From: Octopus sinensis
Lineage: Eukaryota
NCBI RefSeq assembly: GCF_006345805.1
Contig: NC_043003.1
Location: 39,556,001-39,620,000 of the forward strand
Length of the DNA stretch: 64,000 bases
Direction of reading: 5' to 3'
Both the position numbers and the translations under genes were made by a program. Positions 13,949 to 64,000 of the stretch are shown in pieces (position 1 is the stretch's first letter; every line of letters begins with the position of its first letter). The notes beneath the pieces are model-generated. The model worked only from the letters and a program-made list of their open reading frames with translations. It made no database searches and was not told where the DNA came from.

Positions 13949-14976
13949 ACATATATATATATATACATACATATATATATATATACTTATACATACACAC
14001 ATAGATATATATGTACATACATATATATATGCATACATATATATCTCTCTCTATATAAACGGCAGTTTGTCTGTGTGTGTTTCTGTGTGTCTGTTTGGTT
14101 GTACCCTCACCCTGACCACGGCTTTCAACCGATTCTGATGAAACTTGACACACACATAGCCCAATGTCATAATTCAAAACTAACGCAGCGAAAATTTTGA
14201 AAAGTTCCCCCAGTTCTGAAAAAAATCGATAAATTCAACATGGGGTCGAGAATCAGAAACACAAACCACAGACTGTCTAGGGGACGCAACTCCACCTTTT
14301 TAACTCTCAAAAAAATTTACCATCATTTTTTTCCCATTTTTTTGCTATATTTTGGCTATAACTATCTAAAAATGCTTTATAGTTATTTCCCTTACAAACC
14401 CGAGCAATGCCGGGCGATACTGCTAGTACACATATATATACATACATATATATACACATATATACATACATACATACATACATATATATATACATACATA
14501 TATACATACATACATCCTACTCTCTCTCCAACCGGTTAGCTTCTACTTCCTCTACAGCAAGACACCTGTTTCTGTCTTTCTGTCTCATGATAACTTTTCA
14601 TAATCTGACTCAAGATCACCTCCTCCTATGCTGCCTACCCCTTGAAAGTTTTTTTAAAATTTTTTGTCTTGGAAGTACTTGGTGACCCTGTCCATACAGG
14701 TGCCACTTAAAAGCACCCAGTCTACACCGTAAAGTGGTTGGTGTTTGGAAATGCATCCAGCTGTAAAAACCTTGCCAAAACTGACCTCACCTGTGCTTGT
14801 ACCACATAAAAAGCACTAAGTCCACTCCGCTGAGTGGTTGGTGTTAGGAAGGGCATCCAGCTGTAAAAATCCTGCCAAACAATCACAGAAGTCTGGTGCA
14901 GTTATCTGCCTGGCTGGCTCTTGTGAAACCATACCACCCATGCTAGCATGGAAGGCAGACATTAAACGATGATGAT

Positions 14977-15024
<48 letters not shown>

Positions 15025-16734: not shown

Positions 16735-19700
16735 CTGTCTGTGTGGATGCACACACATCCATGAGCTACATAGCAGTAGTGGGTCAATTCACAGTTGTTA
16801 CTACTGGCTCAGATGATACATCTGTTAGTACAGGATCACATGTAAGACTTGGATCAGATAATACAGCTGTTTGTCTTAAAAAAAACACAAAAGCAACAGG
16901 TTACAAATATATCATCTTGCTACAGAGGATCTAGATGTGTAAAGGAGATGAAACTAATTAATGAAACACTCAAAATCACATTTTATCTCACTCTACAAGT
17001 GTTCTAGCCAAAAACTAGACAAAAGTACCATCCTACCTGTCAAGTTGTGACATAATTATCTCTTGGGTTTGGTAAGCTGTTGTTCTAGCAGAGAAGTTCA
17101 TACAGTTTGGAATGTATCTGTAAAATGAAAGTTATAATTCAAGCGGATGTATGTATGTATGTGCTCGATAGCATGTCTACAGGATAAGTGTGACTACATA
17201 AATACACACACACACACATACATATATAAACACACATTTACACATGCACACACACACACACACGCATGCACACACACACATGCATGCACACACACACACA
17301 CACACATACAGACTCGATATTTTAACCTGCCATGAAATGTCCTGAAAAACAGACTGTTATTTTACTACACAATTACATATACAGGTGTGCATGTGTGTGT
17401 GTGTGTGTGTGTGTGTGCATATGTGCGTGTGTGTGTGTGTGGGAATGTGTTATATATATGTGTGATGGAAGATGTACACATATATTAGGTGTACATGAAT
17501 GGCTTTTGAGGGCCATACAAGCTATGTAGAAAGACGCAGTAACTAAAAAATGATTTTAGTGATAAATTTAGTGTGAAGGTAGGAGTTCATCAAAGTTCAG
17601 TCCTCCGTCCCTTTCTGTTCATCATAGTCCCACAAGCCATCACAGAAGAGTTGAAGACAGGCTGTCCATAGGAACTCCAAACGCTGTACCCAAAATAAGC
17701 TATGAACCCACAAGAGATGTAGTGGAATCACAGTCAGACTAACCAAGTAAGCAAGCTTCATATGTGATAGATGCACAGGAACAGTATGTACTATGAATAC
17801 ACTGAAATCATATTCTCTTAAATGCCCAGATGGCTCATTAGAAGTTGATAGTGTTTGTTACCTAGGTAACAAGAGGAAGTAGCTGCTCCAAAAAAATATA
17901 GTAGCCAGAGTAAGAATGAGTTGGGATAAGTTTAGGGTAACTACAACAGCTGTTGGCATCAAAGGTCTTTTTCTCTCTGAGTAAAGGGACAGATTGTATG
18001 ATGCTTATGTTAGAACTGTGATGCTACATTGTAGTGAGACATAGAGCTTGAATGCAGAAGACTTGAAAAAATTCTCTTGCTCTTTCCTCTTTTACTTGTT
18101 TCAGTCATTTGACTGTGGCCATGCTGGAGCAGTGCCTTTAGTCGAACAAATCGACCCCAGGACTCATTCTTTGTAAGCCTAGTACTTATTCTATCGTTCT
18201 CTTTTGCCGAACCGCTAAGTTACGGGGACATTAACACACCAGCATCGGTTGTCAAGTGATGTTGTGGAGACAAACACAGACACACACACACACATATATA
18301 TATATATACATATATATGACGGGCTTCTTTCAGTTTCCATCTACCAAATCCACTCACAAGGCTTTGGTTGGCCCGAGGCTATAGTAGAAGACACTTGCCC
18401 AAGATGCCACGCAGTGGGACTGAACCCGGAACAATGTGGTTTGTAAGCAAGCTACTTACCACACAGCCACTCCTACACCTCTTAAGGTAACCAAATGCCT
18501 CGTCATCTAATTAGTGATGTGCAGGCGGCTACCCGGTACTACTTTGTTGTGGTGAGAGAGCTTATACCCTTTGAGGGAGGAGCAGCTCGGTTTCATCCAG
18601 TCAGTCTCCCTTTGATTTGACCCCATGTCAGCCTTGTGCACCACTGGGGCTTCGCCTACTTGTCGTAGGTGGCACTGTCCCAACGTAATACACTGGCACC
18701 TGCTACAACCATCGTGCACACCCAGAGTGCACAACCTGCATCTGTCATCGGACTCTCAGTCGGTATCAGGCACCAAAGGGGCCATGCTTCCTGGGCGCGA
18801 AGTGAGGCGCAGGGCAAACCGAAATGGTAGGCACACGCAACCCACCACCTCTTCTCCCCTGGCCAGTTGAAGAAAAAATCCCTCCAGAAATGTGAGACTA
18901 ATGAAGAACAATGGGAAATCATGGTCATGAACAGGTCTGAATTGAGGCAAGCAATTCACAAGGGAACTGGACTTTATGAAAATGAAAAACAAGTCAGTCA
19001 AATGGAAAAGCATGCAACAATGAAGGTGAGAACTAACACAACAGATCATTTCATTGTGTGTCTAGTATGCAGCTGCCATTGTGCATTTGACTTTGGACTC
19101 ACATCATGCATGAAGGTGCACATAATAATATATTTTGAAAAGTATTAACTGAAGAAGTAATGGTGTTACTAGATCGAATAAGCCAGTGGCAAGTTTAAAT
19201 TCATAAACAAGCAGGAGTGGCTGTGTGGTAAGTAGCTTGCTTATCAACCACATGGTTCCGGGTTCAGTCCCATTGCGTGGTACTTTGAGTGAGTGTCTTC
19301 TACTATAGCTTCAGGCCAACCAAAGCCTTGTGAGTGGATTTGGCAGACGGAAACTGAAAGAAGCCCGTCAAATATATGTACATGTATATATGTATATGTG
19401 TGTGTGTTTGAGTGTCTGTATTTGTCCCACCAACATCGCTTCACAACCGATTCTGGTGTGTTTACGTCCCCATAACTTAGTGGTTCGGCAATAGAGACCG
19501 ATAGAATAAGTACTAGGCTTACAAAGAATAAGTCCTGGGGTCAATTTGCTCGACTAAAGATGGTTATCCAGCATGGCCACACTCAAATGACTGAAACAAG
19601 TAAAAGAGTAAGCCATTCCCTGTATTTTGTCATGGAGAAAATTTCTTGCTGTAGACAAATGGTGTAAATACACCTAAATCAGCTTGCAGTGCCACCTATC

Positions 19701-29300: not shown

Positions 29301-32300
29301 CCTAAACACACCAAGCTTTCCATTCCCTATTCCCAATTCCTCCATCTACACAGGCTCTGTAGAGACGACCATGACTTTGAGACTTAGTCTCAACTCATGG
29401 CTCGCCACTACATCCTTTTATCACATGATATAAATGGTATATCACATCATGTGATATAAATTGTATATTACATCTAGTTTATTTCTTATTTTCATAGCTA
29501 AAATACTATTGTTATTTTCACAGCTAAAATACATATCTCTATCAATTTATTCTATAGATTTTTTTTACGTTATGTTTTCACGTGATAACTTTCTTAGCAA
29601 TGCTAGGTTCTAAGTTTAACATTTAAAATTTTGGTTAACTGATATTCTTCAATAAGATAAGTTATGATTTTATTTTTCATCAATATTGTTACATTTTATT
29701 TGATTATTTATTGTTATGATACGTATATTTCTATAGTTATTTGTTAATTATTATATGTTAAGTTACATACATTTATTTTATTATTTTAGACCTGAAGAGT
29801 GGCTATATTTTTAAATCGAATTAATTTTAAATCAAATTTATTTTAATAGTATCAATTTTATTATAGTCATGAAACACGCGTAGTCAAGTTAACGTTTATT
29901 TAATTTAGTGATTTTTTAAATAATATTTATTATAGTGTAGCAATAGTTATCTTCATTGCTATCTTCACTGTTTGAGAAAAACATTAGGAATGATCTCGTT
30001 TGAGATTACAAACATCTTTGGCTAGTTTAACCTTGTTGTTTCCACTGATATGATTGGTTAGCATCTAAGCACGGTATGTCTCTCTACTTATTTCGCCCCA
30101 GTGTGTAAACTGACCAATCACAGCTTTTGGATAGGACCTTTCATTTGAGCCATCTTAACTCCATAAATAGGCTGATTATTTGATGATTCACCATCTTTCG
30201 GCTTAAGACCTTTTAAGGTCTTGGTCGGAGACCACACAGAGCTTACTCAACAATGTTCCAGTTCAAAAGGCAGACGACAGCCAAGCCAACCATACTATGA
30301 AGACACTATTGCAAACCAGCGTCAGACAGAACGTCATCACCAGCATCATCTCCATCTACGAAGATTTCAACTTGTACACAACAAGATAAATACAGATTCA
30401 ACTCATGCTGTTAGTGTGAAAACCTCACCACGGAAAAACAGTTGCAGTATATATATCTGAAAGAATATCTATATCAAGAGAAAAATATGCACAACAAGTG
30501 ATTCAACTAATCTCCACTCCGAGACTCAAATCTTGTTATAGAACTCATTATCGTGTACTACATGAACTGGTAAAATAACTCTAAAATAACTCCATTTGAA
30601 CTCAAATTGTTGAGACTTCTCTTATGCTCTGTTGTATTCGCATGCACCTTATTCTGTACTTCTGTCGCACACATGAACACACAGACACAAATATTATAAG
30701 CATGCATTCATGACACAACACTATGCTAATAATCACAAATCACTTTGTACACTGTGAATAAAATCTATCTTCTCTTTATAAAAGTAGAACAGTTTTTGGC
30801 GTCCTTTATTCATTTACTTTGCACTGTATATAAACATGTATAATGGCTTATATATAACATAACATTATGTTATGTTGGAATGCAGCCGTGCGCTGTACAA
30901 AAGGAGAAATATGTCACCAAACTCCTCACGTATGGTCGTATTCTCACAATAGTGTATTTAAATTTTTCATATATAATATAGATAATGTCTTTCACTATTG
31001 AATTACTTAATAGAGGTTATATCTCATAATTATATACATATATTATATATTGTGAAATTTGATTTAGAATTGCTAAATTGAATTTTTCCCAGTGAGTTTG
31101 GAATTATATTCCCTACTATTATATATATATATATATATACAAACATACATTATAGCCTCAGGCCCACCAAAGCCTTGTGAGTGGATTTCGTACATGGAAA
31201 CTGTAAGAAGATTGGCATATATATGTGTATATTTGTGTGTGAGTGTGTGTGTTTGTAGCCACACCATTGCTTGACAACTGATGTTGCTGTGTTTACATCC
31301 CTGTAACTTAGCTATTTGGAAAAACACACTGATAGAATAAGTACTAGGCTTACAAAGAATAAATCTTGGGGTTGATTTCTTCGACTAAAGGCCACAGTCA
31401 CATTAACGATACAAGTAAAACAATAAAAATATATGTCATTTTAATCCTGAGCAATGCCGGGTATCGCTGCTAGTGTGTATATATATATATATATATTATA
31501 TATACAGGAGTTGGACAAAATAATGGAAACACCTTAAAATTTCAGACAAATTTATTTTAATATGGGGTAGTACCGCCTTTGGCAGTAATTACAGCTTGAA
31601 TTCTACAAGGTATGGACTCGTACAAAGTTTGAATTGTTTACAAAGGAATTTTTATCCATTCTTCAGCTAAAACAGTGTCCAGTTCTTGTAGTGATGGTAG
31701 TAGATGATATCAACTCCTTGTTTTTATAAAATGCTCCATAAATATTCAATAATATTGAGATCTGGGGACTGTGGTGGCCAGATAAGATGATCAACTTCAC
31801 TAGAATGTTCCTCGTGCCATTCAGTAACAACTTTAGCAGTGTGAATTGGTGCATTATTATCCTGAAAGATTGTGTTTCCCTCCAGAAACTCTTTCGCAAT
31901 GATAGGATGAATTTGATTAGATAAAATGCTTAAATAGTCTTGACTATTAATTCTGCCATAAAGTGAAACCATTGGGCCGGCAGCTTTCCAAGATATAGCC
32001 CGCCAGATCATCACAGATCCTCCTCCATGGTTAACAGTTGGAAGAAAGCAGTCTGGGTCAAATACTTCTTTTGGCTGTCTCCACATGTATACTCGGCCGG
32101 TGGTCGGAAATAAGGTAAAAGATGACTTGTCCAAGAAAATAACATTCTTCCACTGCTCTAGGGACCAATTCTGGAGGTTTTTACTCCACTCTAAATGCTT
32201 TGCAACATTTGATTTTGAAAGTAGTGGTTTTCTGATTGCAGCCCTCCCATGAAATCTGGCTTTGTGCAGCTCCCAGCAAAAAGTTTTTGTGGAAACTGGG

Positions 32301-34445
32301 TTCACGAGGAGGTCATTAAGTTCTGCGGTAATTTTCGGAGCTGTACTTTTGTGATCCTTTCTAACAACTCACGTAAGAGTCCGACAGTCCCTATCTGAAA
32401 GTTTTAGTTTTCTACCGGAGTTTTGTTTTGATGAGGAGGTTTTTACCACTTTCTCAAAGGCTGTCATTACTTTCGAGACAGTACTTCTTGATACACCAAA
32501 CATTTCAGCTGTTTTCGTTACACTAGTGCCTGCCATATGAGCACCAACAATTTTACCTCTTTGAAAGTCTGATAGATCTGTCATTTTAATGAATTTTAAT
32601 TACCTTTTTCCGATGATATCTGTAAAGAAACAGCCATTTTAGCATAACATATTAAGCAACTCTAATAATAAATGAAAAAATATATAAAAATAAACAAGCT
32701 TTTGACGGTATAATAGTTATTTCAAAATTATGATGTTATGATGCTAAGTGTTTCCATTATTTTGTATAACCCCTGTATATATATATATATATATATATAC
32801 ATACATACATACATACATACATAGATACACACACACACACGCACACACACACCTTTCATGCTACTAACATGCACTAAAAACTTCTTATGATACCATGAAA
32901 TTGTAATATTTTCACTAATTTCTTACTCATAATTAGTGAAAGCTAAACTGGTGGACTATGTAAACTGGTTGACTTCTTTTTATATCTATTATTATAACTC
33001 ACTACATAGGAGTAAAATCTCTCCAACAAAACTTTTCACTACACACACACACATAAATATATATTAGTTCATATATAGGTACAGGCATGGCTGTGTGTTA
33101 AGAAGCTTGCTTCCCAACCACATGGTTCTGGGTTCACTCCCACTGCATGGCACCTTGGGCAAGTGTCTTCTACTAAAGCCTCAGGCCAACCAAAGCCTTA
33201 TAAGCGGATGTGGATTAGGTAGACGGAAACTGAAACAAGCCCATATATGTGTGTGTGTGTGTGTGTGTGTAACAGTGTAACATATGGTATAATTAAAAAC
33301 AGGGCAAATATATATGGGTGTGTCTGTGTGTGCGTGTGCATGTATGTATATATTTGCGTGTCTGTGTTCATCTCCCCACCATCACTTGACAACTGATGTT
33401 AGTGTGCTTATGTCCCAGTCATTTAGTGGTTCGGCAAAAGGGACTGATAGAATAAGTACTAGGTTTACAAAGAATAAGTCATGGGGTTGATTTGTTTGAC
33501 TAAAGTTGGTGCTCCAGCATGGCCTCAGTCAAATGACTGAAACATGTGGAAAAAAAATATATATTGGTGAGGATTAGTGTATGCTAGGCTATCTTGTGCT
33601 AGGTCCATTACATCATGACAAGGTCATTACTGTGGTTCTTGTGACTGCAAACACTATGAGATTCAGCATTATACCATTAGGTTGCTATTTACGCAAACTC
33701 ATCCATATATATAAATCAGTTTATTCCAGTAATTACATGCAGACCACCTTACCTGTTGACTTGTCAAGGTTTTTCCACCCTCAGCATCTTTGTCGGAGTC
33801 CCTGATTTCATCCATCAAGCACGTATACATGCTCAGGAAGGAGTAAATAAGTTGCATGTCGGATACTCTGAGGAAGAGTCGGCATTTATGTTGTACAAAG
33901 TAGAGGGTGGGTGGCATGAGCCACTCAAACATGTCATTTATCAGTTCCTTGTGAGCAAGTTCTAGATGGTCTGGGAGTTCATAGTCCATGTAGGATTGCT
34001 TGAAGGGCCTCCATCCCATTTCTTCAGGTTCCATGTAGATCATTCCACATCTGCTCACTGTGGCTGGTGAGGCTTGCTCAAGGTCAGCAGCTTCAAACAG
34101 TAAGTTCATTGCTTTACTCATCTGGATTATTTCACCACTCATTAAACATAGCTATAAAATAGATAATTAAACAGGATAATTAAGATAAAGAAACACAATT
34201 TGTTTAGCTTTTGTTAGTGTGTTATATAAGATGAGAAATTAAAATTTATGAATATAGGCTCAGATGTGGGTGTGTGGTAAGAAGCTTGCTTCCCAACCAC
34301 ATAGTTCCAGATTCAGTCCAACTGTGTGGTACTTTCGGCAAGAGTCTTCTACTATAGCCTCGGACCAACCAAAGCCTTGTGAGTGGATTTGATAAACAGA
34401 AACTGAAAGAAGCCTGTTGTATGTGTATGTGTGTGCATATATATG

Positions 34446-34488
<43 letters not shown>

Positions 34489-37400
34489 TATATATATACA
34501 TAGACATATGTATATACATATATATATACATATGTATATACACATATATAATAATACATACATCATCATCATCATCATCATCATCATCGTTTAACGTCCG
34601 TTTTCCGCGCTAGCACGGGTTGGACGGTTCGACCGGGGTCTGGGAAGCCAGGGGCTGCTCCAGGCTCCAGTCTGATCTGGCAGAGTTTCTACGGCTGGAT
34701 GCCCTCCTAACGCCAACCACTCCGTGAGTGGAGTGGGTGCTTTTTACGTGCCACCTGCACAGGGGCCGGGGGGTCCGGCATCGGTCACGATCGGTTCGAG
34801 CTTTTAAAGTGCCAGTGGCACGGGGGCAACGGGATCCGGGGTACTTTGGGGATCCGGGGTACTTTGAATGGTTAGGGGGTATGTGGAATTGCTGCAGAAA
34901 GCAGCCCGGGTCTTTGCAGTCACAGCATATCTCCAGAGATCTCGGTCCTTCGCCATTGCCTCAGTGAGGCCCAATGCTCTGAGGTCATGCTTGACTACTT
35001 CATCCCATGTCTTCCTGGGTCTACTCTCCCCCTGATACCTTCAACTGTTGGGAGTGGCACTTCTTCACACATCTCTCTTCATCCATCCGCAGCACATGAC
35101 CATACCATCGCAAGCGTCGCTCTTGCACACCACATCTGATGCTTCTTATATCCAGCATTTCTCTCAGGATGCTTACACCTGTCTTGCGTGCACACTGACA
35201 ACAAACATCCAGCGGATCATGCTAGCTTCATTTCTTTCAAGTCTACGCATGTCCTCTGCAGTCACAGCCCATGTTTCATTACCGTGAAGCATGGCAGTTC
35301 ACACACATGCATCATACAGTCTACCTTTCGCTCTGAGGGAGAGACCTTTTGTTGCCAGTAGGGGTAGGAGCTTTCTGAACTTTGCCCAGGCTATTCGTAT
35401 TCTAGTGGTGATACTCTCTGTGCATCCACCTCCGCTACTAACTTGGTCACCCAGGTAGCGGAAACTATCAACTACTTCTAGTTTCTCTCCCTGGAGTGTG
35501 ATGGAATCTGTTTTCTGAGTGTCTGTTGTGTCTATTGTCCCTGTGCATCTGCTGCACATGAAAGCTATCTTATCTGTTAATTTCCCTTTAATGTTGCTGC
35601 ACCTCTTATGTGTCCATAGCTTACATTGGGTGCATCTTATGGAGTTTCTACCTGTACCTTTCTTACAGATTGAGCAGGGCCACCTACCCGAAGGGGTGTG
35701 TGCTGAGTACCTCTTGCTGCTTACTAATACTTTGGTCTTTGCTACATTTATTCTAAGGCCCTTTGATTCTAACCCTTGCTTCCACACCCGAAATTTCTTT
35801 TCTAGTTCCGGTAGTGATTCTGCTATGAGAGCTAGGTCATCGGCATAGAGGAGCTCCCAGGGGCATCCCGTTTTGAATTCCTCTGTTATTGCCTGAAGGA
35901 CTATGATGAATAAAAGGGGACTGGGCTGAGCCCTGGTGCACACCTACTTCTACCCGGAATTTCTTCACTATATCATGCCAGTCCTAACCTTGCTGACAGC
36001 CTCTCTGTATAGAGCCTGTACAGCCCTTATTAGCCATTCGTCAATCTCCAGTTTCCGCATCGACCACCAGATAAGGGAACGGGGAACCCTGTCAAAGGCT
36101 TTCTCCAAGTCTACAAAAGCTATAGTAGGGGTTTATCTTTAGCTAGGTACTTCTCCTGCAGTTGTCGGACCAGGAATATAGCATCAGTGGTGCTTCTACC
36201 TGGTACAAAACCGAACTGCATTTCATCTAAACAAATTCTCTCCCTAATGAGATGGGTTATGACCTTCTCTGAGACCTTCATCACCGGTCCAACAGTTTGA
36301 TACCTCTGTAGTTATTTCTATCTAGAGCATCACCCTTACCCTTGTAAGTTGACTATGTGCTGCTGCACCAGTCATTGGGTATGACTCCATTGTGAACTAC
36401 CTGGTTTACAATGCGGGTGACTATGCCATAGCCCACATAGCCAGCTGTTTTAAGCATCTCAGCAGTGATTCCTGATAGGCCGGGGGCTTTACCTGGTTTC
36501 ATATCCTTAATTGCCTTATCTACAAGGGAGCTGTCTATTCGGGTAGCTGGTCCCTCTACTGGGTCAACATTTGGCAGGCTCTCCTCCTCCCATTCATTCT
36601 CCTCATTCAGCAGTCTTTCATAATGGCTTCTCCAAGCCTCTTTCTTTTCACTAGCAGTAAAAGCAAGTGCCCCATCATCCATTCAGACACATTTCTCTCC
36701 TATAACATCACTATTTTCTCTGACACACTGTCTGGCAATCCGAAATACTTCAGCTCTTTGATCCTCGCGTCGCTGGACATTGGCAAACTTCTTCTTTTCT
36801 GCTACATCTTTGGCTATGTATACCTGCCACCCAGCCTCCCTTTTGGCTATCTGGTACAGTTCCCTGCTGCCCCCATCCTTCCAGGCTTTCCAGGCCCGTC
36901 TCTTTTCACAAATGGCTTTATCTACTGCACTATTCTACCACCACGTAATTCTAGGTCTGGAAGGGACTTTGCACCATCCACAGACTCGGTCTGTGGCACT
37001 CAGCAAGCTGTCCCATAGGAATTCCCAGCTACCTTCTATGTCTGACGTCTGAAGCTCCTCCTCCCTCTCATCAAATTTCTTGATGAGTATGTCCCTAAAT
37101 TTCTGACCATGTGAAGGGTTCTTTAGCCTCCAAATCCTTCTTTTCTGGATTGGTTTGTTTCTTGGAGTCCTTCTGGCCTCAAGCTTAAAGTCACTGATGA
37201 TTAGTCTATGCTGAGGGATACATTCTTCACTCGGGAGGGTCTTTGTATTCAAGAGCAACCCTGCATCCCGCTGTCTGGTGAGGATGAAGTCTATTTGGCT
37301 AGCGGAATCTCCTGACTGATAAGTTATAAGGTGGCAAACTGGCTTCTTGAAGTTAGTGTTGCAGATTGAAAGGTTACATGCATCACAGAATTCCAGCAGT

Positions 37401-38410
37401 CTAGTTCCCTCATCATTTCTGGTGCCAATACCATGGCCACCATGTACCCCAGTGAAGATACCCGATTCCCGCCCAACATGCCCATTAAAATCTCCACCTA
37501 CAAAGATGAGGTCCTTGCTACTAGTCTTTGAAGTAGCCTGCAGAAGGGTATCATAAAAGTTGTCCTTCTGATCATTTGGTAGTCCCACTTGTGGGGCATA
37601 GGCGGAGATAATCATAGCTGTGCCACTCTGTAGGACCAACCTGAGCTTAAGCACTCTATCGCAAACCCTGACAACCTCTATGACCTTATCCACCCATTTC
37701 TCCGCAAGGAGAATGCCTACCCCCTACACCTTCCACGTTACCTTGCCAGAAGAGTTTGTACCTAAGTGCCTTGCCCGTGAGGACCCTAGCTGAAGCACCT
37801 CTCCATCTTACCTCTTGTATGTAGCATACATCAACCTGTCTTCTCTCTAGCATCTCTACAATCTCACTAGACTTGCCTGTCAATGTACCAACATTGATAG
37901 TGCCAACTCTAAAACTGGGAAGGAGATGTGGGGCGGAGGGGGGGATTCAGCGCCTGAGAAGAGGGGGTTGTTGTGGTGGTGATAGTTTTCGTGGCATTTT
38001 TTTTGATCTCTCTTCCGACCTGACCACGCCGTGGGCAGGAGCTGGTGTTAGCAGTGGTCATTCGTTATCGTCACTGAGTAACGTAATTAGGTAGCGTAGT
38101 AAGGGGAAAAATACAGATATTCTAGAGTTGAGTTGGGGGGGGGGTCCAGCTGAGAAAGGTTCACCAGTGAAACGAGAGAGGAGAGATAGTGGAGGGGTGC
38201 GGGTAATATAGGGGAGCACCAGTGGGGAAGGTTGGGGTAAGGAGGAACGATGGCAGGAAGGGTTGGTGCAGGTTCGTAAGAAATAAAAACGTAGGATATT
38301 ACTAGGCGGGGGGTGGGGGACTGGAAGGAGATAGTCGGATGAGGCAGGCAGTGTCAGATTCAAAAACAGGAGGAAGCGTAAGATCAGTGGGCGGTTGATG
38401 AGCTGTGGCG

Positions 38411-38447
<37 letters not shown>

Positions 38448-41400
38448 CATACATATATATATACATACATATAAATATATACATACACATATATATCATC
38501 ATCATCATCGTTTAGCGTCCGCTTTCCATGCTAGCATGGGTTGGATGGTTCAACTGGGGTCTAGGAAACCAGGAAGCTGCAAAAATCCAGTCTGATCTGG
38601 CAATGTTTCTACGGCTGGATGCCCTTCCTAACGGCAACCACTCCGTGAGTGTAGTGGGTGCTTTTTACGTGCCAGATGAGGCTGGCAAACGGCCATGATC
38701 GGATGGTGCTTTTTACGTGCCACCAGCACGGGGGCCAGGCGAGGCTGGCAATGGCCACGTTCAGATGGTGCTTTTTCGGTGCCACCAGCACGGGGGCCAG
38801 GCGAGGCTGGCAACGGCCACGATCGGATGGTGCTTTTCACGTGCCACCGGCACGAGGCCAGGCGGGGAGGCACTGGCAACGGCCACATTCGGATGGTTCT
38901 CTTAAGTACCACCGGCACTGGTATCACAGCTGCAATTTCCATTGATGTTGATTGATTTCGATTTTCACTTGCCTCAACAGGTCTTCACAAGTAGAGTTTT
39001 GTGTCCCAAGAAGGAAAGGTATGCATAAGTGGACTGGCTACATCCCATGTAGAGGCCACGGGTTACGGTTTCACTTGTCCTGCCGGGTCTTCTCACGCAC
39101 AGCATACTTCCAAAGGTCTCGGTCTCTAGTCATTTCCTCAGTGAGACCTAAAGTTCGAAGGTCGTGCTTCACCACCTCATCCCAGGTTTTCCTGGGTCTG
39201 CCTCTTCCACAGGTTCCCTCAACTGCTAGGGTGTGGCACTTTTTCACACAACTATCTTCATCCATTCTCGCCACATGACCATACCAGTGCAAATGTCTCT
39301 CTTGCACACCACAACTGATGCTTCTTAGGTCCAGCTTTTCTCTCAAGGTACTTACACTGTCAAGTATGAACACTGACATTACACATCCATCGGAGCATAC
39401 TGGCTTCATTTCTTGCGAGCTTACGCATATCCTCAGCAGTCACGGCCCATGTTTCACTGCCATGTAGCATGGCTGTTCGTACACACGCGTCATACAGTCT
39501 GCCTTTTACTCTGAGCGAGAGGCCTTTTGTCACCAGCAGAGGTAAGAGCTCTCTGAACTTTGCCCAAGCTATTCTTACTCTAGCAGTTACACTTTCAGCA
39601 CACCCGCCCCCGCTACTGACTTGGTCACCTAGGTAATGGAAGCTATCAACTATTTCTAGTTTTTCTCCCTGGAATGTGGCAGAAGTTGGTCTCAGAGCAT
39701 TTTCAGTGTTTATTGCTCCTGAGCATCTGCCACATACAAAAACTATCTTCCTAGTTAGCCTTCCTTTGACATTGCTGCACTTCTTATGTGTCCATAGCTT
39801 ACACTTGGTGCATCTTATAGAGTTTCTACCTACACTTTTTCTACAGATCGAGCAGAGCCATCTACCTGAAGGCATTTGTCATTTGTCTACCTTCCTACTT
39901 ATTAGGACTTTGGTTTTAGCTAGATTGACTCTAAGGCCCTTTGATTCTAATCCTTGCTTCCACATCTGAAACTTCTCCTCCAGTTCTGATAGTGACTCAG
40001 CAATTAGAGCAAGGTCATCAACATAGAGGAGCTCCCAGGGCATCCTGTCTTGAATTCCTCCATTATTGCCTGGAGGACTATGATAAATAGGAGGGGGCTG
40101 AGGACTGAGCCTTGGTGGACCCCTACCCGGAATTTCTTTACTGTACTAGTTGCCAACCCTCACCTTACTAGTGGCGTCCCTGTAAATGGCTCGCACAGCT
40201 CTCACTAACCATTCATCTATCCCTAGTTTCCTCATTGACCACCAGATAAGGGATCGAGGGACCCTGTCGAAGGCTTTCTCCATGTCAACAAAAGCCAGGT
40301 ACAGGGGCTTATCTTTGGCTAGGTATTTCTCCTGCAGCTGCCTTACCAGGAATATAGCATCAGTGGTACTTTTCCCTGGCAAGAACCCAAACTGCATCTC
40401 ATCTAAACTAACTCTCTCTCTAATTAGTTGGGTTATGACCCTCTTCGTAACTTCATTACCTGATCCAACAGCTTGATACCTCTGCAATTATTTGTATCTA
40501 GGGCGTCACCTTTACCTTTGTAGCAGTTGACTATTATGCTGCTACACCAGTCATTGGGTATGCCTCCTTCATGTATCACCTGATTAACCATACGTGTGAA
40601 TAGGCTATAGCCGACACTACCGGATATTTTGAGCATCTCTGCAGTGATTCCTGATGGGATGGGGCTTTCCCTGTCTTCATGCTTCTAATTGCCTTAACTA
40701 CCGAGGAACTGTCAACTCAGATAGCTGATCCCTCTGTTGGGTCGACATTAGGCAGACTCTCTTTATCTCACTCATTTTCTTTATTCAGCAACCTTTCATA
40801 GTGGTGTCTCCAAACCTCTCTCTTTGCATCCTCATTTAGCGCAAGTGAACCATCATCCATGCGAACACATTTCTTTCCTACCACATCACGATTCTCTCTC
40901 ACACACTGTCTTGCAACACGAAACACCTCAAGTCTTTGGTCCTCTCAAGTTTTTGGTCCTCAAAGTCTTTGGTCCTATATATATATATATATATATATAT
41001 ACTAGACTAGAATAGCCGTGACCCATTGGGTTAGGGTCAGAGTTTCCTAGCAACGGAGTTATGTTTTATGTTTTTTTTTTCCACCTTATTTCACATGCTT
41101 TCAATGAATGTGACATCGAAATCACACATAAACGGCTCCTTACCCCAGAAAAGAAAAGATTTGGCTGCTATTTCTTGCATACCCAGCTACCAAGTAACAG
41201 GTATTTCAAGTCCTTAACCACAAATACCTGTTATGTGGTAGCAGAGCGTGCTAGAAATAGCAGCCAACTCTATGGAGCTGAGATACGTTGAATGTACCCG
41301 AAAAATGTTTTGTAATGATATCCCCTTGGGGGCAATCTTTTGCTTTGATTCTCAGAACTGTCATCTGGATCAGGTGGTTTTGTTCGTTAATTTCCATAAA

Positions 41401-43442
41401 AAAAATTTATGTATTTTCTTTCAATTTAAAGTGAGAGAGAGGTAAAAGTGAAAGAGGTATGAATGTATATATGAAATGGACATGTGTGTGTGAGAGAGAG
41501 AGAGAGTACTACTTACACTTACATGAGAACACACATGTTCACTCACTCTCTCTCTCTCTCTCTCTTCTCTCCCTATCTTTCTCTCACACATACATACAAA
41601 AAAGATGAACACATATGTATTGATGTAAGTATACATGACAATACACCCCTTCACTCACTTTCTTTCTTCCTCTCCCTCTTTTCTTTCTCTCTCTTCCTCT
41701 CTCTCTCTTTCATTCACACACACACGTCCATTTAATATACATGTACATACATCTTTCTTTCACTTTAAAACAAAAATCAATAAATGAAAAATTTTTACAG
41801 AAATTTACGACTTGAAAATAATTTTAAAAAACAATAAACTATTGTGTGGTTAAAGAAAGCTAAATTATAAATACTTACTGTACAAACAACTTACATTTTT
41901 GAAATCACAATCAGTTAAAAATATTTCTAAATGATTAAAATACTGTGTACATCAAAAAGTTGACATTATTTTTTTTTCTGAGAGAGTGCAAAGACTATGT
42001 GTGTGTATACGTCACAGATAACAGATGTGTGTTTGTGTTGATTGACATGCCATGACATTCATAATATGTGTGTGTATTCTTATTCTGTATGTGTGTTGTT
42101 GTCACAGAAGCTGTATTTTTTTCCATCGAGTAATAACAAAAATTGTGTTTAATCATTTTCCTTAATAAATAGAGGTTAAATTTGTACTGCAAGTATGAAA
42201 ATAAATATGCAATAAAATTAAGATAAAATATATTATTTCTGAGATGTTTCAGGTACTCACAAACATCCCTAGATTTTTAGTATTATGAAGATATATATGT
42301 ATATATCTTAGAGCACTCCATTGGTTACAACGATAAGATCAACAGAATAGCTTGCTTGTGAAAATAACGTGCAAGTGGCTGAGCGCTTTACAGACACATG
42401 TACTCTTAACATAGTTCTCAGGGAGATTCAGTGTGACACAGAGAGTGACAGGGCTGGCCTTTTTGAAATACAGGTACCACTCATTTTTGCCAGCTGAGTG
42501 GACTGGAGCAACATGCAATAAAGTGTCTTGCTCAAGGATACAATGCATCACCAGGAATTGAACTCACAACCTTATGATTGCGAGCCAAATGTTCTAACCA
42601 CTAAGTCGTGTGTGTGTGTGTGTCTTTGTGTCTGTGTTTGTCTTCTCATTACCACTTGACAACTAGTGTTTGTGTCTACCTCCCCGTAACTTAGTGGTTC
42701 AGCAAAATAGACCAATAGATTAAGTACAAGGCTTAAAAAATAAGTTCTGGGGTCGATTTCTTCAACTAAAACTCTTTAAGGTAATGCTCCAGCACAACTG
42801 AAGTTAAATGACAGAAACAAGTAAAAAAAAATAAAAGAGTAACAGAGAGTGTGTGTGTGTCTTGAAACTAACCTTTTTGTTGTCGTCAAGGACTGTATTC
42901 ATGTTCTCAATCCAGATGGCATCCACAGGACCATCAAAAATAATCCACTTGCGGTCATCGGTCGCTTCATTAGCAAATGACCTGAATACTGTTGCCAAAA
43001 CCCCTGGGAGAGAGGACAAACAAAAAGAGAAATATGGTAATCACTGGGATTAGAAATAAGCTGTCAGTCACTTGTTTACACTATTGGGTCAAGGAATATT
43101 TAGAGAATTTATGGAATATACGGAAAAAATGGACAGGAAAATAATTATGACGATGATGACGGTGACGATAACAGTGGCAACGATGACAGCAACAACAACA
43201 TCGATGATGGAGAATATATAGAATATAGTCAAAGACAACTAGTTTATCAAGCCAGGCTGAAGCATAAACTAGATCACACAGGCTATATAAGGACAATTAT
43301 TACAAAACAACCTAATTTATAATGTAAACCAAAGTCAATGTATAAAGGGTCAATATACATTGTAGCAACTTAAGATTTTTGAAAATTATGAGGTGTTAGC
43401 AAAGTTTGTGTACAGAGATGTGTTGGAAGAACTTATTTACAT

Positions 43443-45784: not shown

Positions 45785-48048
45785 TATATATATGCCATGT
45801 AAATAAGTTCTTCCAACACATCTCTGTACACAAACTTTGCTAACATCTCATAATTTTCTAAAATCTTAAGTTGCTACAATGTATATTGACTCTTTATACA
45901 TTGACTTTGGTTTACATTATAAATTGTTTTTCTTTGTAATAATTGTCCTTATAGGAAAACAAGATTTTCTTGGATCTGGGTATGACAAGAATCTAATCCC
46001 ACTTGGATGACAGAATTCATTGTGAATATGTCAAAGAAATCTAGCTGAACATTCCAACACAAGACATCAGTGTGCAAATTCTCTTTTCGACAGTCGTAGA
46101 AAATGTCAAAGCTATATGAATCAAGCTGAACCCTACAATGTAATATCTTGTCATCTTTATTTTGTATTTTTAAGATTTATCAAATATATTTCAGTTAATC
46201 TCGAATGAGAGTAAAGTGTCAGTTAATGTTGCTATTGACATTAGTACTTAGCAGTTGTGACAAATTTATTCTCAATAAAAGGATACAATTTACTTTTGGA
46301 AAGGGTGCAAGAGGGGAAAAACTTACTGGACGCCCACCTTGTGATAACGTAGCTAGACCAACGACTTAATGAGTCAGTAACAAACTCGTCTATCACAATG
46401 CATTACAGAACACAATGCTTTAGCATTGTGTTCTGTAAGTGAGAGAACTCATAACTTGAGGAAAAAATAGAATCACAATCAAGACCATGTTTAACCCTTT
46501 AGCATTCAAATTACTCTATCAAATCTAATACTTGTTTATTCACAGTGTTTTGAATTAATCATGCATTATCTCATAACTTCAAGATTTCAATGATGTGGCT
46601 GAAAATTTTTGGAATGATATTGTAGAGTAGGTGTGAGAAGCCAGATCTAGCTGATTTGAACAAAGAACAGGTGGAATATTTGGGCTGGATATAACCAGTT
46701 TAAATACTAAAGGTTTAATTTCCTTTCAATCTCAATTATCACAGATCTTCTACCATAAATACTACATATTTTATTAGCATACATTGTCTTCTCTCACCAC
46801 AGGTCTTCTATTTTCATGGTAACTCCCTCCAATCACTACAGTTCTCTAAACTTACTATTCATTGAGACACCCTTCGGTCATGACTGACCATGGGATTGCA
46901 CCTAGAAAGTTACCCTCCCAGGCACAAGTCCGGGCAAGGTTGTTTATGAAAGACCAGCAGTTGCCCATGCATACTGGCCTCCCCTCTCCATGCCACCAGT
47001 GTTATCCAAGGGAAAGGCAAAGACCGATACAGCTGGGTACCTGTGATGTCACAACTCATTTCTACAGCTGAGTGAACCGGAGCAAAGTGAAATAAAGTGT
47101 CTTGCTGAAGAACACAACACGCAGCCCGGTCCAGGATTCGAACTCACAACCTCACGATTGTAAGCTCGACGCTCTAACGACTGAGCCATGCGCTTTCACA
47201 AAACTTACTATTACATAATTCATTTCCATAATACTCTCCAGCCACAAGTCTTTTACATACACTGTCACATGTTTTAATACCAGAGTGTAATACACACGAT
47301 ATGGCTAATATTTTATACAGTCATTGAAGAAAAAAGGCACTAAATGCAAGAAAGGTATTTGCAAGTGTTCATTCACAAAAAGAATTGACCTTACCGTCTG
47401 TCCACTCATGGGACACAGGATCAAAGCAACCATATAATTGTCCCATTGTGATAGACTTGGGGTTAATTATGGTATATTTCACTTTGTTTTCTTCAAACAG
47501 TTTACCCTGGCAGAGATCTGTCAAAGCATCTGCAAGAACTTGGTAAGCCATGGTTTTCCCGCCCAAAGGTTCTCCAACAATCATCAAGCCATGGCGTACA
47601 AGAATCATTTCATATACCTGCAACACAGAAGATGTAAATTTATATATACACACATTGTCATCATCATCATCGTTTAACGTCTGTCTTCTATGCTGGCATG
47701 AGATACACAAACACACACATATAACCTGCACTTGGTCGGTTATGAAGACAAGGGTTCCAGTTGATCCAATCAATGGAACAGCCTGCTCATGAAATTAATA
47801 TGCAAGTGGCTGAGTACTACACAAACACATGTATCCTTAATGTAGTTCTCAGGGAGATTCAGCATGACACAGAGTGTGACAAGGCTGGCCCTTTTGAAAT
47901 ACAGGTACTACTCATTTTTTGACAGCTGAGTGGACTGAAGCAACGTGAAATAAAGTGTCTTGCTCAAGGACACAACACATTGCTGGGAATTGAACTCACG
48001 ACCTTATGATCAGGAATCAAATACTCTAACCACTAAGCCACATGCCTT

Positions 48049-50602: not shown

Positions 50603-51162
50603 TGTGTGTGTCTTTATGTTGGTATTCATTCTGCATACACCACATGGCAACTGGTGTTGGTTTACTTATATCACTGTCACTTAGCAGTTTGGCAAAAGAG
50701 ACCAATTGACTAAGTACCAAACTTAAAACAAAAACAAAAAAATAAGTATTGGGGCTACTCTGTTCAACTAAATCCTTTGAGGCAGTGCCCCAACATGGAC
50801 ACAGTAAATCAAGTAAAAGAAAGAAAATATAAAAAAAAAAAAACAAATAAAGACATATACTTCACAGAGGCAATGGTGAATGACTGAGTCCTTGGGATTA
50901 TGTTGTGCTTGAGAAGAAAACCCATCAAGCCAAGTAAAATCACAGTCAAGGCAGATACTGGTGTCACACACATGGCACCCATGCTGTTGGTACATAAAAG
51001 CACCCATTTACATTCTTGGAGTGGTTGCCATTAGCAAGGGCATCCAGACATAGGAACCATGCCAAATCAGACTGGAGTCTGGTACAGCCTTCTGGCTTGC
51101 CAGCCCTGGTCAAACTGTCCAACCCATACCAGCATGGACAACAGATGATGATGATTATGATG

Positions 51163-51194
<32 letters not shown>

Positions 51195-63842: not shown

Positions 63843-64000
63843 AGGAGGAGAAGAGGAGGAGGTGGAGGAGGAGGAGATGAGGTGGAGGAGGAGGAGATGA
63901 GGTGGAGGAGGAGGAGGAGGTTAATAGTGATGGTGACAGCGACAATGGTGGTGATGGTGATGATTACAGTGATAACAATGATGATGGCAGTGGTGGTGGT
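63843..64000 (+). repeat. (GAG/GGA/GAT/GGT)n low-complexity tract
   Basis: Read directly from the sequence. Confidence 0.85.

What the first reader, a model, noticed from the sequence alone, without database searches (positions are those of the whole stretch)
35545..39854. PHD-type zinc finger inserted inside the reverse transcriptase of RTE LINEs
Seen: between the RT motifs KTKVL and LEVVDSF.YLG, both LINEs encode C-x2-C-x10-C-x2-C-x4-H-x2-C-x14-C-x2-C (35545-35676 and 39723-39854). All 8 ligands and the Trp before His are conserved although many other residues differ, and a CDRC remnant occurs in the old copy at about 17765. Known: this is C4HC3 PHD spacing; PHD fingers often read histone H3 tails; in LINEs they are usually reported in ORF1, and BovB-type RTEs have only a short linker here. 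Inference: a chromatin-reading or lipid/RNA-binding module built into the RT that could steer target choice. I cannot confirm whether it has been described.
Basis: partly seen in the sequence, partly recalled or inferred. Interest (0 to 1): 0.8.

Follow-up and report, generated by a model that had tools for sequence, protein, structure and literature searches.

The report
PHD finger inside RTE reverse transcriptase
Two dead octopus RTE-type jumping genes carry a PHD zinc finger built into the middle of their reverse transcriptase; a whole sub-lineage of these elements, from sea anemones to cephalopods, keeps it as strictly as the catalytic site, so the enzyme may itself read chromatin or grip target DNA when it inserts.

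Summary
On the minus strand, both LINE copies encode C-x2-C-x10-C-x2-C-x4-H-x2-C-x14-C-x2-C (35545-35676 and 39723-39854). A third, decayed copy keeps a remnant at 17670-17774 (+).

Evidence that it is a PHD finger:
- Pfam PHD passes its curated threshold in both copies.
- AlphaFold2 models it at pLDDT 91-96.
- Foldseek returns PHD fingers almost exclusively (TAF3, BPTF, Pygo, PHF13).

The module is a roughly 65-residue insertion between RT motif 6 (KTKVL) and motif 7 (FxYLGD). Three PHD-less RTEs have only a short linker there.

In 152 non-identical homologues, each zinc ligand is kept in 94-98%, about as well as YADD. This marks a selected, lineage-defining feature: Octopus, Argonauta, Nematostella, Hydractinia and many unnamed assemblies.

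The closest solved relatives of the family profile are Pygopus PHD fingers. Five residues of the Pygo H3K4me pockets (Y341, V350, A356 and W366 of the K4me2 cavity; I357 of the adjacent T3 pocket) are matched by conserved residues. The acidic lip is missing and the domain is strongly basic (+5.8 on average).

In R2 elements the same loop (motif 6a) wedges into target DNA. Best reading: a chromatin and target-DNA tether used during target-primed reverse transcription. This function is inferred, not shown. I found no published description; automatic annotation already flags the domain.

The parts
34561..37946 (-). RTE LINE copy A. Nearly full length but dead: three in-frame stops (36935-36937, 36683-36685, 35299-35301) and about seven frame changes.
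   Evidence: Six-frame reading. tblastn with the intact relative P0374 covers its residues 24-1028. Pfam finds Exo_endo_phos_2 in 36935-37693(-) and RVT_1 in 35299-35943(-).
36938..37946 (-). Apurinic-type endonuclease (APE) domain of copy A.
   Evidence: Pfam Exo_endo_phos_2, 32.4 bits. Best named database hits are 'craniofacial development protein 2-like', an automatic name that (from memory) derives from a BovB/RTE endonuclease.
35836..35847 (-). RT motif 5 (YADD, catalytic) of copy A.
   Evidence: Residues 33-36 of ORF 35943..35302. Y/F-A-D-D is kept in 149-151 of 152 homologues.
35725..35739 (-). RT motif 6 (KTKVL) of copy A, the upstream border of the insertion.
   Evidence: K, T and K are kept in 141-146 of 152. 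It aligns with INVQKSQ of human L1 ORF2p.
35545..35676 (-). PHD finger of copy A (C4HC3, 44 residues, net charge +10).
   Evidence: AF2 gives pLDDT 91-96. Foldseek top hits are PHD fingers.
35446..35463 (-). RT motif 7 (FRYLGD, primer-grip region) of copy A, the downstream border. The beta-hairpin [11 protein letters not shown] just before it is shared with PHD-less RTEs.
34561..34900 (-). 3' UTR of copy A, ending in (ATG)9, which reads as (CAT)9 on + at 34561-34588. The tail recurs as a separate ~245-bp repeat elsewhere in the window.
38429..40944 (-). RTE LINE copy B. It is 5'-truncated (starts at about residue 405 of about 1030, so it has no APE) and dead. It is 78% identical in DNA to copy A. 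Its 3' UTR holds a 62-bp tandem repeat at 38671-38918.
39723..39854 (-). PHD finger of copy B (net charge +13). A stop codon lies just upstream at 39879-39881.
17516..18074 (+). Old, internally deleted third RTE copy. It runs from RT motif 4 directly into the second half of the PHD and on into the thumb.
17670..17774 (+). Decayed PHD remnant of the old copy ([33 protein letters not shown]). Ligand 4 and the Trp are lost; ligands 3 and 5-8 are kept.

Best explanation
SHOWN. A sub-lineage of single-ORF RTE-type LINEs (APE plus RT, about 1000-1040 aa) carries a roughly 65-residue insertion in the palm of its reverse transcriptase. The insertion lies between motif 6 (KTK) and the beta-hairpin before motif 7 (FxYLGD). 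Its core is a 44-45-residue C4HC3 PHD finger. The three copies in this octopus window are dead relics of such elements. In the lineage as a whole the finger is kept under purifying selection about as strong as on the catalytic YADD.

INFERRED. The finger acts during target-primed reverse transcription as a tether between the RT and the chromatin at the insertion site.
- It keeps a Pygopus-type semi-aromatic methyl-lysine pocket: an aromatic residue followed by Pro before Cys1, the Val of GVG, the Ser/Ala-Ile of NSI, and the Trp of WVH. This pocket could hold a methylated histone H3 tail or a similar peptide.
- Its unusually basic remaining surface would lie against DNA.
- The host loop is the one that in R2 elements (motif 6a) wedges into the DNA upstream of the nick.
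- RTE proteins have no ORF1 and no Pfam-detectable nucleic-acid-binding domain, so this module would supply the missing grip and could bias where the element lands.

Confidence is about 0.95 for the structural part and about 0.4 for the functional part. The figure below is for the functional claim.
For: Identity and fold:
- Pfam PHD is above its curated cut-off in both window copies and hits 31 of 31 family members (best E 5e-10).
- AF2 pLDDT is 91-96 over the finger.
- Foldseek top hits are PHD fingers: TAF3 at rmsd 2.0 A with probability 1.00, then BPTF, Pygo, MLL1 and PHF13.

Insertion:
- YADD-to-xYLG spacing is 120-139 in 146 homologues, against 64 in the PHD-less RTE family P0410/P0417/P0423/P0432.
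- Vanessa and Prosopis RTEs have short linkers at this point.

Architecture: the intact relatives P0374 (1031 aa) and P0390 (1004 aa) read Exo_endo_phos, then RVT_1, then PHD, then the rest of the RT.

Selection:
- Ligands are kept in 94-98% of 152 unique segments and the Trp in 96%.
- P is kept in 91%, V in 93%, I in 90% and L in 94%, all comparable with YADD and KTK.
- All 8 ligands are intact in 121 of 152 segments.

Pygo likeness:
- The family profile's best PDB hits are PYGO2 and PYGO1 PHD fingers (E 8e-7 to 3e-6).
- 38 of 120 homologues carry a precomputed PF27108 'PHD_Pygo' hit.
- In that alignment Pygo1 Y341, V350, A356, I357 and W366 match the conserved [YFW], V, S/A, I and W. Y341, V350, A356 and W366 are walls or base of the K4me2 cavity, and I357 lines the adjacent T3 pocket. 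W366E, V350E, A356E and an I357 mutant abolish or nearly abolish H3K4me binding in Pygo (PMC2726290).

Position: R2 motif 6a contacts and wedges into upstream target DNA (PMC11204384, PMC12180492, PMC13188248).

Charge: mean net charge is +5.8 +/- 2.1 and never negative, while the flanking RT segment is neutral.
Against: - No binding data of any kind exist.
- Pygo's acidic lip D352 falls in a two-residue gap, and the invariant E360 that holds H3 A1/R2 is replaced by variable small or polar residues.
- Pygo's histone-binding face is acidic, whereas this domain is strongly basic. The H3 tail is itself basic (general knowledge).
- The aromatic residue before Cys1 is absent in 21% of members (D or H instead).
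- A PHD signature does not guarantee histone binding. Plant VEL PHD superdomains lack it (PMC9640981, listed).
- I could not obtain model coordinates. Whether the pocket faces solvent or packs on the RT is unknown, and the equivalence with R2 motif 6a rests on linear position only.
Confidence: 0.4

Rival explanations
1. Pure nucleic-acid clamp or wedge. The finger does not read histones. Its basic surface and exposed aromatic residues bind target DNA, the primer strand or the RNA template next to the primer grip. This would be an enlarged version of R2 motif 6a, or work like a retroviral zinc knuckle that stacks aromatics on bases.
For: - Net charge is +5.8 on average and +10 and +13 in the window copies.
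- It sits in the same loop as R2 motif 6a, which wedges into DNA, next to the motif 7 primer-grip hairpin.
- RTE proteins otherwise show only APE and RT domains.
- Pygo's acidic histone-contacting residues are lost.
Against: - Most characterised PHD fingers bind peptides, not nucleic acids (general knowledge).
- The residues that are conserved map precisely onto a methyl-lysine pocket rather than only onto basic patches.
- This rival is not exclusive of the best explanation.
Confidence: 0.3
2. Structural brace or docking site for a protein partner. The zinc module stabilises the palm-thumb junction, or recruits a host factor or a second RT molecule through the PHD surface, as Pygo PHD binds BCL9 HD1 on its rear face. 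It has no role in reading chromatin or DNA.
For: - Pygo-type PHDs have a dedicated protein-binding rear surface (PMC2726290).
- Conservation of the surface residues G, N, S and L is compatible with a fixed protein interface.
- PHD-less RTEs function without the module.
Against: - A mere brace would not need the pocket-forming Trp, Val, Ser/Ala and Ile pattern.
- No partner is known.
- The high positive charge is unexplained.
Confidence: 0.2
3. Lipid- or membrane-binding C1/FYVE-like module.
For: - There are sub-threshold Pfam hits to C1_1 and C1_2 in 18 and 19 of 31 members.
- One FYVE domain (EEA1) appears low in the Foldseek lists.
- The surface is basic.
- A lipid link has been proposed for LINE ORF1 esterases (PMC3905857).
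Against: - C1 scores in the window copies (14.9-23.8 bits) stay below the curated cut-offs (26-26.5) where PHD passes; for the other members only E-values were returned.
- Ligand order is C4HC3, without the leading His of C1 domains.
- The top 40 Foldseek hits are PHD fingers with probability up to 1.0, against 0.16-0.87 for FYVE.
Confidence: 0.03
4. Chance cysteine pattern or neutral passenger in decaying repeats, with no function.
For: The window copies are pseudogenes. Within the window alone, retention of the nine key residues is only marginally significant (P = 0.054).
Against: - Ligands are 94-98% conserved over 152 segments that are about 40-55% identical to copy A, from cnidarians to cephalopods.
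- Intact ORFs of 1000 aa or more carry it.
- Pfam is above threshold and the predicted fold is confident.
Confidence: 0.01

Closest known systems
Pygopus (PYGO1/2, fly Pygo) PHD finger, an H3K4me2/3 reader that binds BCL9 HD1 on its rear face
   Same: - It is the best PDB match of the family profile (E 8e-7).
- It shares the signature [Y]-P-C-G-x-C ... V ... (A/S)-I-x-C ... C-x-K-W-x-H-x-x-C-(S/T)-G.
- Four of the five K4me2-cavity residues (Y341, V350, A356, W366) and I357 of the adjacent T3 pocket have conserved counterparts (PMC2726290).
- 38 of 120 homologues have precomputed PHD_Pygo hits.
   Different: - The two-residue 'DD' of the Pygo loop, including the lip D352, is deleted, and E360 is not kept.
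- The loop between ligands 6 and 7 is shorter (14 residues).
- The surface is basic instead of acidic.
- The domain is embedded in a polymerase palm rather than at the C-terminus of a Wnt co-activator.
- Whether it descends from a captured Pygo gene is unknown.
PHD fingers in or next to ORF1 of CR1/L2 (Jockey superfamily) LINEs (Kapitonov & Jurka 2003; Metcalfe & Casane 2014, PMC4120745)
   Same: It is a PHD finger carried by a non-LTR retrotransposon. [quoted passage not shown]
   Different: Those fingers lie in ORF1 or at the N-terminus of the ORF, as separate modules. Here the finger interrupts the RT catalytic domain of an ORF1-less RTE element. That paper describes ORF2 structure as 'highly constrained'.
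R2 RT 'motif 6a' loop
   Same: It occupies the same linear position, after RT motif 6 and before motif 7. In cryo-EM structures it protrudes from the RT and wedges into upstream target DNA.
   Different: Motif 6a is a short loop without zinc. R2 has separate N-terminal ZnF/Myb DNA-binding domains and a restriction-like endonuclease. Spatial equivalence was not tested here.
Classical PHD-less RTE elements (BovB, C. elegans RTE-1, lepidopteran and plant RTEs)
   Same: - Single-ORF APE-RT architecture.
- APE hits named 'craniofacial development protein 2-like'.
- Shared C-terminal RLRW(F/Y)GHV...GRGRP(R/K)KTW motifs.
- A microsatellite-like 3' end instead of poly(A).
   Different: About 32-33% RT identity to copy A, against 40-55% within the PHD-bearing group. 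Only about 9-15 residues lie where the PHD group has about 75.
RTE-2_OV, the octopus brain-expressed RTE LINE (Petrosino et al. 2022, PMC9115989)
   Same: [quoted passage not shown]
   Different: The paper calls the finger C2H2 and does not place it inside the RT. Its sequence was not retrievable from the held supplements, so I cannot tell whether it is the same module.

Membership tests
PHD finger (Pfam PF00628) | Eight zinc ligands in the order C4-H-C3 with canonical spacing | tested here: met
   C-x2-C-x10-C-x2-C-x4-H-x2-C-x14-C-x2-C in both copies. In the first 120 homologues the spacing is 10 or 11, then 4, then 14 in 76 of 81 intact fingers.
PHD finger (Pfam PF00628) | Profile score at or above the curated gathering threshold | tested here: met
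   26.4 and 25.3 bits against 24 for the ORFs; 31.5 and 29.2 bits for the fingers alone. 31 of 31 family members hit PHD.
PHD finger (Pfam PF00628) | Cross-brace fold with a small two-stranded sheet and a short helix | tested here: met
   This is a prediction only. AF2 pLDDT is 91-96, with strands 101-103 and 110-112 and helix 113-116. Foldseek matches TAF3 PHD at rmsd 2.0 A, probability 1.00, target TM 0.64.
PHD finger (Pfam PF00628) | Binds two zinc ions | not testable with these tools
   Needs metal analysis of purified protein.
Methyl-lysine-reading (Pygo-type) PHD finger | Pocket-dividing Trp two residues before the His ligand | tested here: met
   Trp is present in 146 of 152 segments. 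[quoted passage not shown]
Methyl-lysine-reading (Pygo-type) PHD finger | Second aromatic wall (Y341) and hydrophobic base (V350, A356) of the K4me cavity | tested here: met
   [Y/F/W] in 120 of 152, Val in 141 of 152, Ser/Ala in 144 of 152. Copy A has Thr instead of Val.
Methyl-lysine-reading (Pygo-type) PHD finger | Acidic contacts to the H3 tail (lip D352; invariant E360 for A1/R2) on an acidic binding face | tested here: not met
   D352 and D353 fall in a gap, and E360 aligns with a variable G/S/T/Q position. Net charge is +5.8 on average.
Methyl-lysine-reading (Pygo-type) PHD finger | Measured binding to an H3K4me peptide | not testable with these tools
   Requires peptide array, ITC or NMR.
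RTE clade of non-LTR retrotransposons | Single ORF with N-terminal APE endonuclease followed by RT, and no ORF1 | tested here: met
   P0374 and P0390 are single ORFs of 1004-1031 aa with Exo_endo_phos followed by RVT_1. Copy A shows APE then RT on one strand, with no further ORF in the 450 bp upstream.
RTE clade of non-LTR retrotransposons | Closest relatives are recognised RTE elements | tested here: met
   APE hits are named 'craniofacial development protein 2-like' and include lepidopteran, plant, nematode and crustacean RTE-type copies. The RT C-terminal motifs are shared with the Vanessa and Prosopis RTEs.
RTE clade of non-LTR retrotransposons | 3' end made of short tandem repeats rather than poly(A) | tested here: met
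   (CAT)9 at 34561-34588, which is (ATG)9 on the element strand, closes copy A and its tail-only relatives.
RTE clade of non-LTR retrotransposons | Placement within RTE proper versus RTEX in an RT phylogeny with reference (Repbase) sequences | not tested
   No reference library of named LINE consensus sequences was available.
C1 (DAG/phorbol-ester-binding) domain | Profile score above threshold and the H-x12-C... ligand pattern | tested here: not met
   C1_1 and C1_2 score 14.9-23.8 bits against cut-offs of 26-26.5. There is no leading His ligand. Foldseek gives PHD fingers.

The most novel reading that the evidence does not exclude
A reverse transcriptase with a built-in histone-mark reader. 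On this reading, a Pygopus-type H3K4me-binding PHD finger was captured once by an ancient metazoan RTE lineage and grafted onto the RT loop that faces target DNA. Target-primed reverse transcription would then be licensed or steered by the chromatin state of the nucleosome next to the nick. This would be a chromatin reader embedded in a polymerase palm and a natural template for chromatin-aware gene-insertion tools.
Probability: 0.25. Interest if true: 0.8.

Novelty: new variant of a known kind. Interest (0 to 1): 0.55.

Why it matters
LINE reverse transcriptases are usually treated as architecturally fixed. Target choice is attributed to the endonuclease or to separate DNA-binding domains.

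Here a reader-type zinc finger is kept for hundreds of millions of years inside the catalytic domain, at the loop that touches target DNA in R2. That would be a different solution for an element with no ORF1 and no other Pfam-detectable nucleic-acid-binding domain.

If it reads histone marks, it makes one question directly testable: do non-LTR elements sense chromatin at the moment of integration? PHD-less sister RTEs provide a natural control.

It also matters for the current effort to engineer R2 and LINE proteins for transgene insertion, because it shows that this loop tolerates a folded 65-residue module.

For annotation, the RVT_1 plus PHD architecture seen in many 'uncharacterized' invertebrate proteins can be read as this RTE sub-lineage.

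Tried and rejected
1. Plus-strand reading of the given coordinates gives only stops.
2. A search with the N-terminal RT piece returned only fragments under 200 aa and said nothing about PHD presence.
3. The APE-based search also returned only split gene models (at most 460 aa). PHD-less relatives therefore had to be examined through their loci.
4. Two exact-protein look-ups (Hydractinia P0035, Necator P0158) were not on record.
5. The cluster-member look-up gave no organism names for the ENA hits. The taxonomic range therefore rests on the few named hits: Octopus, Argonauta, Nematostella, Hydractinia.
6. Literature searches were run on RTE + PHD, RTEX, 'PHD inserted in reverse transcriptase domain', recent AlphaFold + LINE papers, and motif 6a + ORF2p. 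None found a description of an RT-embedded PHD. Kapitonov & Jurka 2003 is not held.
7. The RTE-2_OV sequence could not be found in the held supplements.
8. C1, FYVE and RING readings were considered and rejected on ligand order, thresholds and fold matches.
9. The chance explanation was rejected on family conservation.
10. The geometry of the finger relative to the RT active site could not be examined, because predicted coordinates are not returned.
11. A rooted phylogeny to prove single acquisition was not attempted, for lack of reference and outgroup sequences.

Full report
WHAT IS IN THE WINDOW

The window is animal DNA. The best named protein hits are from Octopus vulgaris, O. bimaculoides and O. 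sinensis.

The finding's coordinates hold the described motif on the minus strand. 35545-35676(-) and 39723-39854(-) both translate to C-x2-C-x10-C-x2-C-x4-H-x2-C-x14-C-x2-C with a Trp two residues before the His. The plus-strand frames contain only stops.

The two fingers belong to two RTE-type LINE copies in the same orientation.
- Copy A (34561-37946) is almost full length. It reads as APE endonuclease, linker, then RT. It is dead, with three in-frame stops and about seven frame changes.
- Copy B (38429-40944) is 5'-truncated at about residue 405 and is also broken. It is 78% identical to A in DNA over 1.87 kb.
- A third, older, internally deleted copy lies on the plus strand at 17516-18074.

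Both younger copies sit, in sense orientation, in an intron of a dynein heavy-chain gene.

IS IT A PHD FINGER?

Yes, by every test available here.
- Pfam PHD (PF00628) scores 26.4 and 25.3 bits in the two ORFs, against a curated cut-off of 24. It scores 31.5 and 29.2 bits for the isolated fingers.
- C1, RING and other treble-clef families stay below threshold.
- All 31 diverse family members scanned hit PHD, with a best E of 5e-10.
- phmmer against PDB sequences finds only PHD fingers at the top: PHF13, SHPRH, PHF23, Spp1, AIRE, TAF3 and BPTF.
- AlphaFold2, run on a 40-sequence alignment, models the finger at pLDDT 91-96 within the 214-residue ORF.
- Foldseek against the PDB returns PHD fingers almost exclusively. 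The best is TAF3 PHD at rmsd 2.0 A and probability 1.00, followed by BPTF, Pygo, MLL1 PHD3 and PHF13.

IS IT INSIDE THE RT?

Yes.
- In copy A the order is YADD (motif 5, 35836-35847), KTKVL (motif 6, 35725-35739), the finger (35545-35676), a beta-hairpin, then FRYLGD (motif 7, 35446-35463).
- Intact database relatives are single ORFs. P0374 (1031 aa) has Exo_endo_phos at 29-240, RVT_1 at 551-755 and PHD at 771-815, and the rest of the RT follows. P0390 (1004 aa) is arranged the same way.
- Three RTEs chosen through their endonuclease or RT, not through the finger, have no finger: a Vanessa cardui element (L002), a Prosopis cineraria element (L003) and the family of P0417. They have only about 9-15 residues between motif 6 and the hairpin.
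- Over all proteins collected, the YADD-to-xYLG spacing is 64 in the PHD-less family and 120-139 in 146 others. The insertion is therefore about 65 residues.
- The closest solved proteins by sequence are human L1 ORF2p (E 1.5e-26) and R2 proteins. The insertion point corresponds to the approximately 20-residue loop after INVQKSQAFLY of ORF2p.

IS IT SELECTED, AND HOW WIDESPREAD IS IT?

Within the window alone, 11 of 44 residues differ between A and B and none of the nine key residues is hit. That could happen by chance about once in 18 (P = 0.054).

The family settles the question.
- The 214-residue ORF has 360 homologues in the 90%-clustered collection. In the 50%-clustered library it has 138 representatives at E <= 1e-30.
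- Of the first 120 homologues, 81 have an intact C4HC3 pattern with almost fixed spacing.
- In 152 non-identical motif 5 to motif 7 segments (the hits used are about 40-55% identical to copy A), each ligand is present in 94-98%. This matches the catalytic YADD (149-151 of 152) and KTK (141-146 of 152).
- Non-ligand residues of the finger are also strongly kept: P before Cys1 (91%), G-V-G (90%, 93%, 87%), N-S/A-I (85%, 95%, 90%), W-x-H-K (96% for W), S-G, L (94%), and F/Y before the last Cys pair (97%).
- All eight ligands are intact in 121 of 152 segments. The remainder are evidently decayed copies.

Named hosts are cephalopods (Octopus spp., Argonauta hians) and cnidarians (Nematostella vectensis, Hydractinia symbiolongicarpus). 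Most hits come from unnamed ENA assemblies, and I could not name them.

The PHD-bearing RTs are 40-55% identical to copy A and the PHD-less RTEs about 32-33%. This fits one acquisition in an old metazoan sub-lineage but does not prove it.

WHAT KIND OF PHD FINGER IS IT?

A profile of 31 diverse fingers finds Pygopus PHD fingers as the best solved relatives (PYGO2 at 8e-7, PYGO1 at 1-3e-6). These rank ahead of KDM5B, PHF13, PHF23 and TAF3. Thirty-eight of the 120 first homologues carry a precomputed hit to PF27108, which a later output names PHD_Pygo.

The HMMER alignment can be numbered against the Pygo1 crystal-structure paper (PMC2726290). The numbering is self-consistent: Y341-P-C-G, E349-V350-N351-D352, A356-I357-L358-C359-E360, W366.
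- In Pygo1 the K4me2 cavity has walls W366, Y341 and D352 and a base of V350 and A356.
- I357 lines the T3 pocket.
- W366E, V350E, A356E and an I357 mutant abolish or nearly abolish H3K4me binding.
- E360 and backbone carbonyls hold A1 and R2.

In the RTE finger the counterparts are as follows.
- Y341 matches [Y/F/W], aromatic in 79%.
- V350 matches Val (93%).
- A356 matches Ser/Ala (95%).
- I357 matches Ile (90%).
- W366 matches Trp (96%).
- D352 and D353 fall in a two-residue gap.
- E360 aligns with a variable G/S/T/Q position.

The hydrophobic and aromatic part of a methyl-lysine pocket is therefore conserved, and the acidic part is gone.

The finger is also strongly basic. Net charge from first to last Cys is +5.8 +/- 2.1 across the family and never negative. 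It is +10 and +13 in the window copies. The preceding 42 RT residues are neutral.

HOW IT MOST LIKELY WORKS

The following are shown:
- a folded zinc module of PHD type;
- its insertion between RT motifs 6 and 7;
- purifying selection on it in a single-ORF RTE sub-lineage.

The rest is inferred. In R2 elements the loop after motif 6 ('motif 6a') protrudes from the RT and wedges into the upstream target DNA, between the contacts of the ZnF and Myb domains (PMC11204384, PMC12180492, PMC13188248). RTE proteins have no ORF1 and no Pfam-detectable DNA-binding domain.

My best reading is that the finger is the element's grip on the insertion site during target-primed reverse transcription. Its basic surface would lie on DNA. 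Its Pygo-like pocket would hold a methylated lysine, most plausibly on the H3 tail of the adjacent nucleosome. I put this at about 0.4.

Three rivals remain.
- A purely nucleic-acid-binding wedge, about 0.3. It is favoured by the charge and the lost acidic residues. It is disfavoured by the precise conservation of pocket residues.
- A structural brace or protein-docking module, about 0.2. Pygo PHD also binds BCL9 on its rear face.
- A C1/FYVE-like lipid binder, about 0.03. It fails on thresholds, ligand order and fold matches.

Two caveats apply. A PHD signature alone does not prove histone binding, as plant VEL PHD superdomains show (PMC9640981). And I could not inspect model coordinates, so the exposure of the pocket and the spatial equivalence with motif 6a are untested.

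COMPARISON WITH WHAT IS KNOWN, AND NOVELTY

PHD fingers in LINEs are known, but in or next to ORF1 of CR1/L2-type elements. A 2014 survey states that no functional study of a LINE PHD exists and that ORF2 structure appears 'highly constrained' (PMC4120745).

Eight full-text searches found no paper describing a PHD finger inside an RT or in RTE elements. The library is incomplete, and Repbase Reports and Kapitonov & Jurka 2003 are not held.

[quoted passage not shown] This may be the same module mislabelled, but its sequence was not retrievable.

Automatic annotation already sees the domain. UniProt names some octopus fragments 'Zinc finger PHD-type domain-containing protein', and precomputed Pfam gives RVT_1+PHD.

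I therefore rate it a new variant of a known kind. It is a real, widespread and apparently undescribed RTE sub-lineage whose RT carries a Pygo-like PHD finger. It is neither a new class of system nor, in this window, a live element.

VERDICT

- Observation: confirmed.
- Interpretation: partly supported. The structure is confirmed; the function is plausible but untested.
- Interest: 0.55.
- Most novel reading not excluded: a chromatin-mark-reading reverse transcriptase, probability about 0.25, interest 0.8 if true.

Noticed in passing
34561-34827; also 1516-1760, 2746-2997(-), 14788-14979(-), 38429-38735, 50973-51180(-), 55037-55227(-), 63676-63849(-): A repeat of about 245 bp ending in (CAT)n on +, which is (ATG)n on the element strand. 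It is the 3' UTR tail of LINE copy A (92% identical at 1516-1757). It recurs at least eight times with similar inner boundaries. It is either a SINE-like non-autonomous partner sharing the RTE tail or a set of tail-only truncated copies.
   Followed up: partly
38671-38918: The 3' UTR of copy B contains a 62-bp tandem repeat (3.9 copies, 83% matches) that copy A lacks. Part of its unit (GGTGCTTTTTACGTGCCACC) is also in the 245-bp tail repeat.
   Followed up: no
34437-34550 and 38412-38496: Both LINE copies end next to (AT)n or (TATA)n microsatellites. The 5' end of copy A lies within about 450 bp of the 3' microsatellite of copy B, so the two are head-to-tail neighbours. This may reflect AT-rich or microsatellite target preference or microsatellite seeding by RTE tails.
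   Followed up: no
33699-34142(-) and 42804-43019(-): These look like exons of a dynein heavy-chain gene. The first hits Dynein_AAA_lid at 39.7 bits. The second reads ...[29 protein letters not shown] and has no Pfam hit. The two younger LINEs lie in the intron between them, in the gene's orientation.
   Followed up: partly
31724-32584(-): A Tc1/mariner-type DNA transposase remnant (DDE_3 at 47.6 bits, plus HTH domains), split into two ORFs.
   Followed up: partly
1300-1467 and at least 10 other places (e.g. 18215-18372, 19315-19481, 61226-61393): A second short interspersed repeat family of about 165 bp, 72-78% identical between copies and unrelated to the LINE tail.
   Followed up: no
47981-48042(-): Rfam tRNA match at 33.6 bits (gathering score 29) that ARAGORN does not call. 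It may be a tRNA-derived SINE head or a tRNA pseudogene.
   Followed up: no
database hits P0001 and P0241: Close homologues of the octopus LINE RT are deposited under bacterial names ('Herbaspirillum sp.' MAG, 67% identical; 'Escherichia coli', 73% identical). These are almost certainly eukaryotic DNA mis-binned in bacterial assemblies.
   Followed up: no
L001 6001-7011 (Nematostella vectensis): The annotated Nematostella 'gene' LOC125560947 is a fragment of this RTE sub-lineage. Its finger has lost the last Cys pair through a small deletion, which illustrates that many 'uncharacterized proteins' with RVT_1+PHD are decayed LINE copies.
   Followed up: partly
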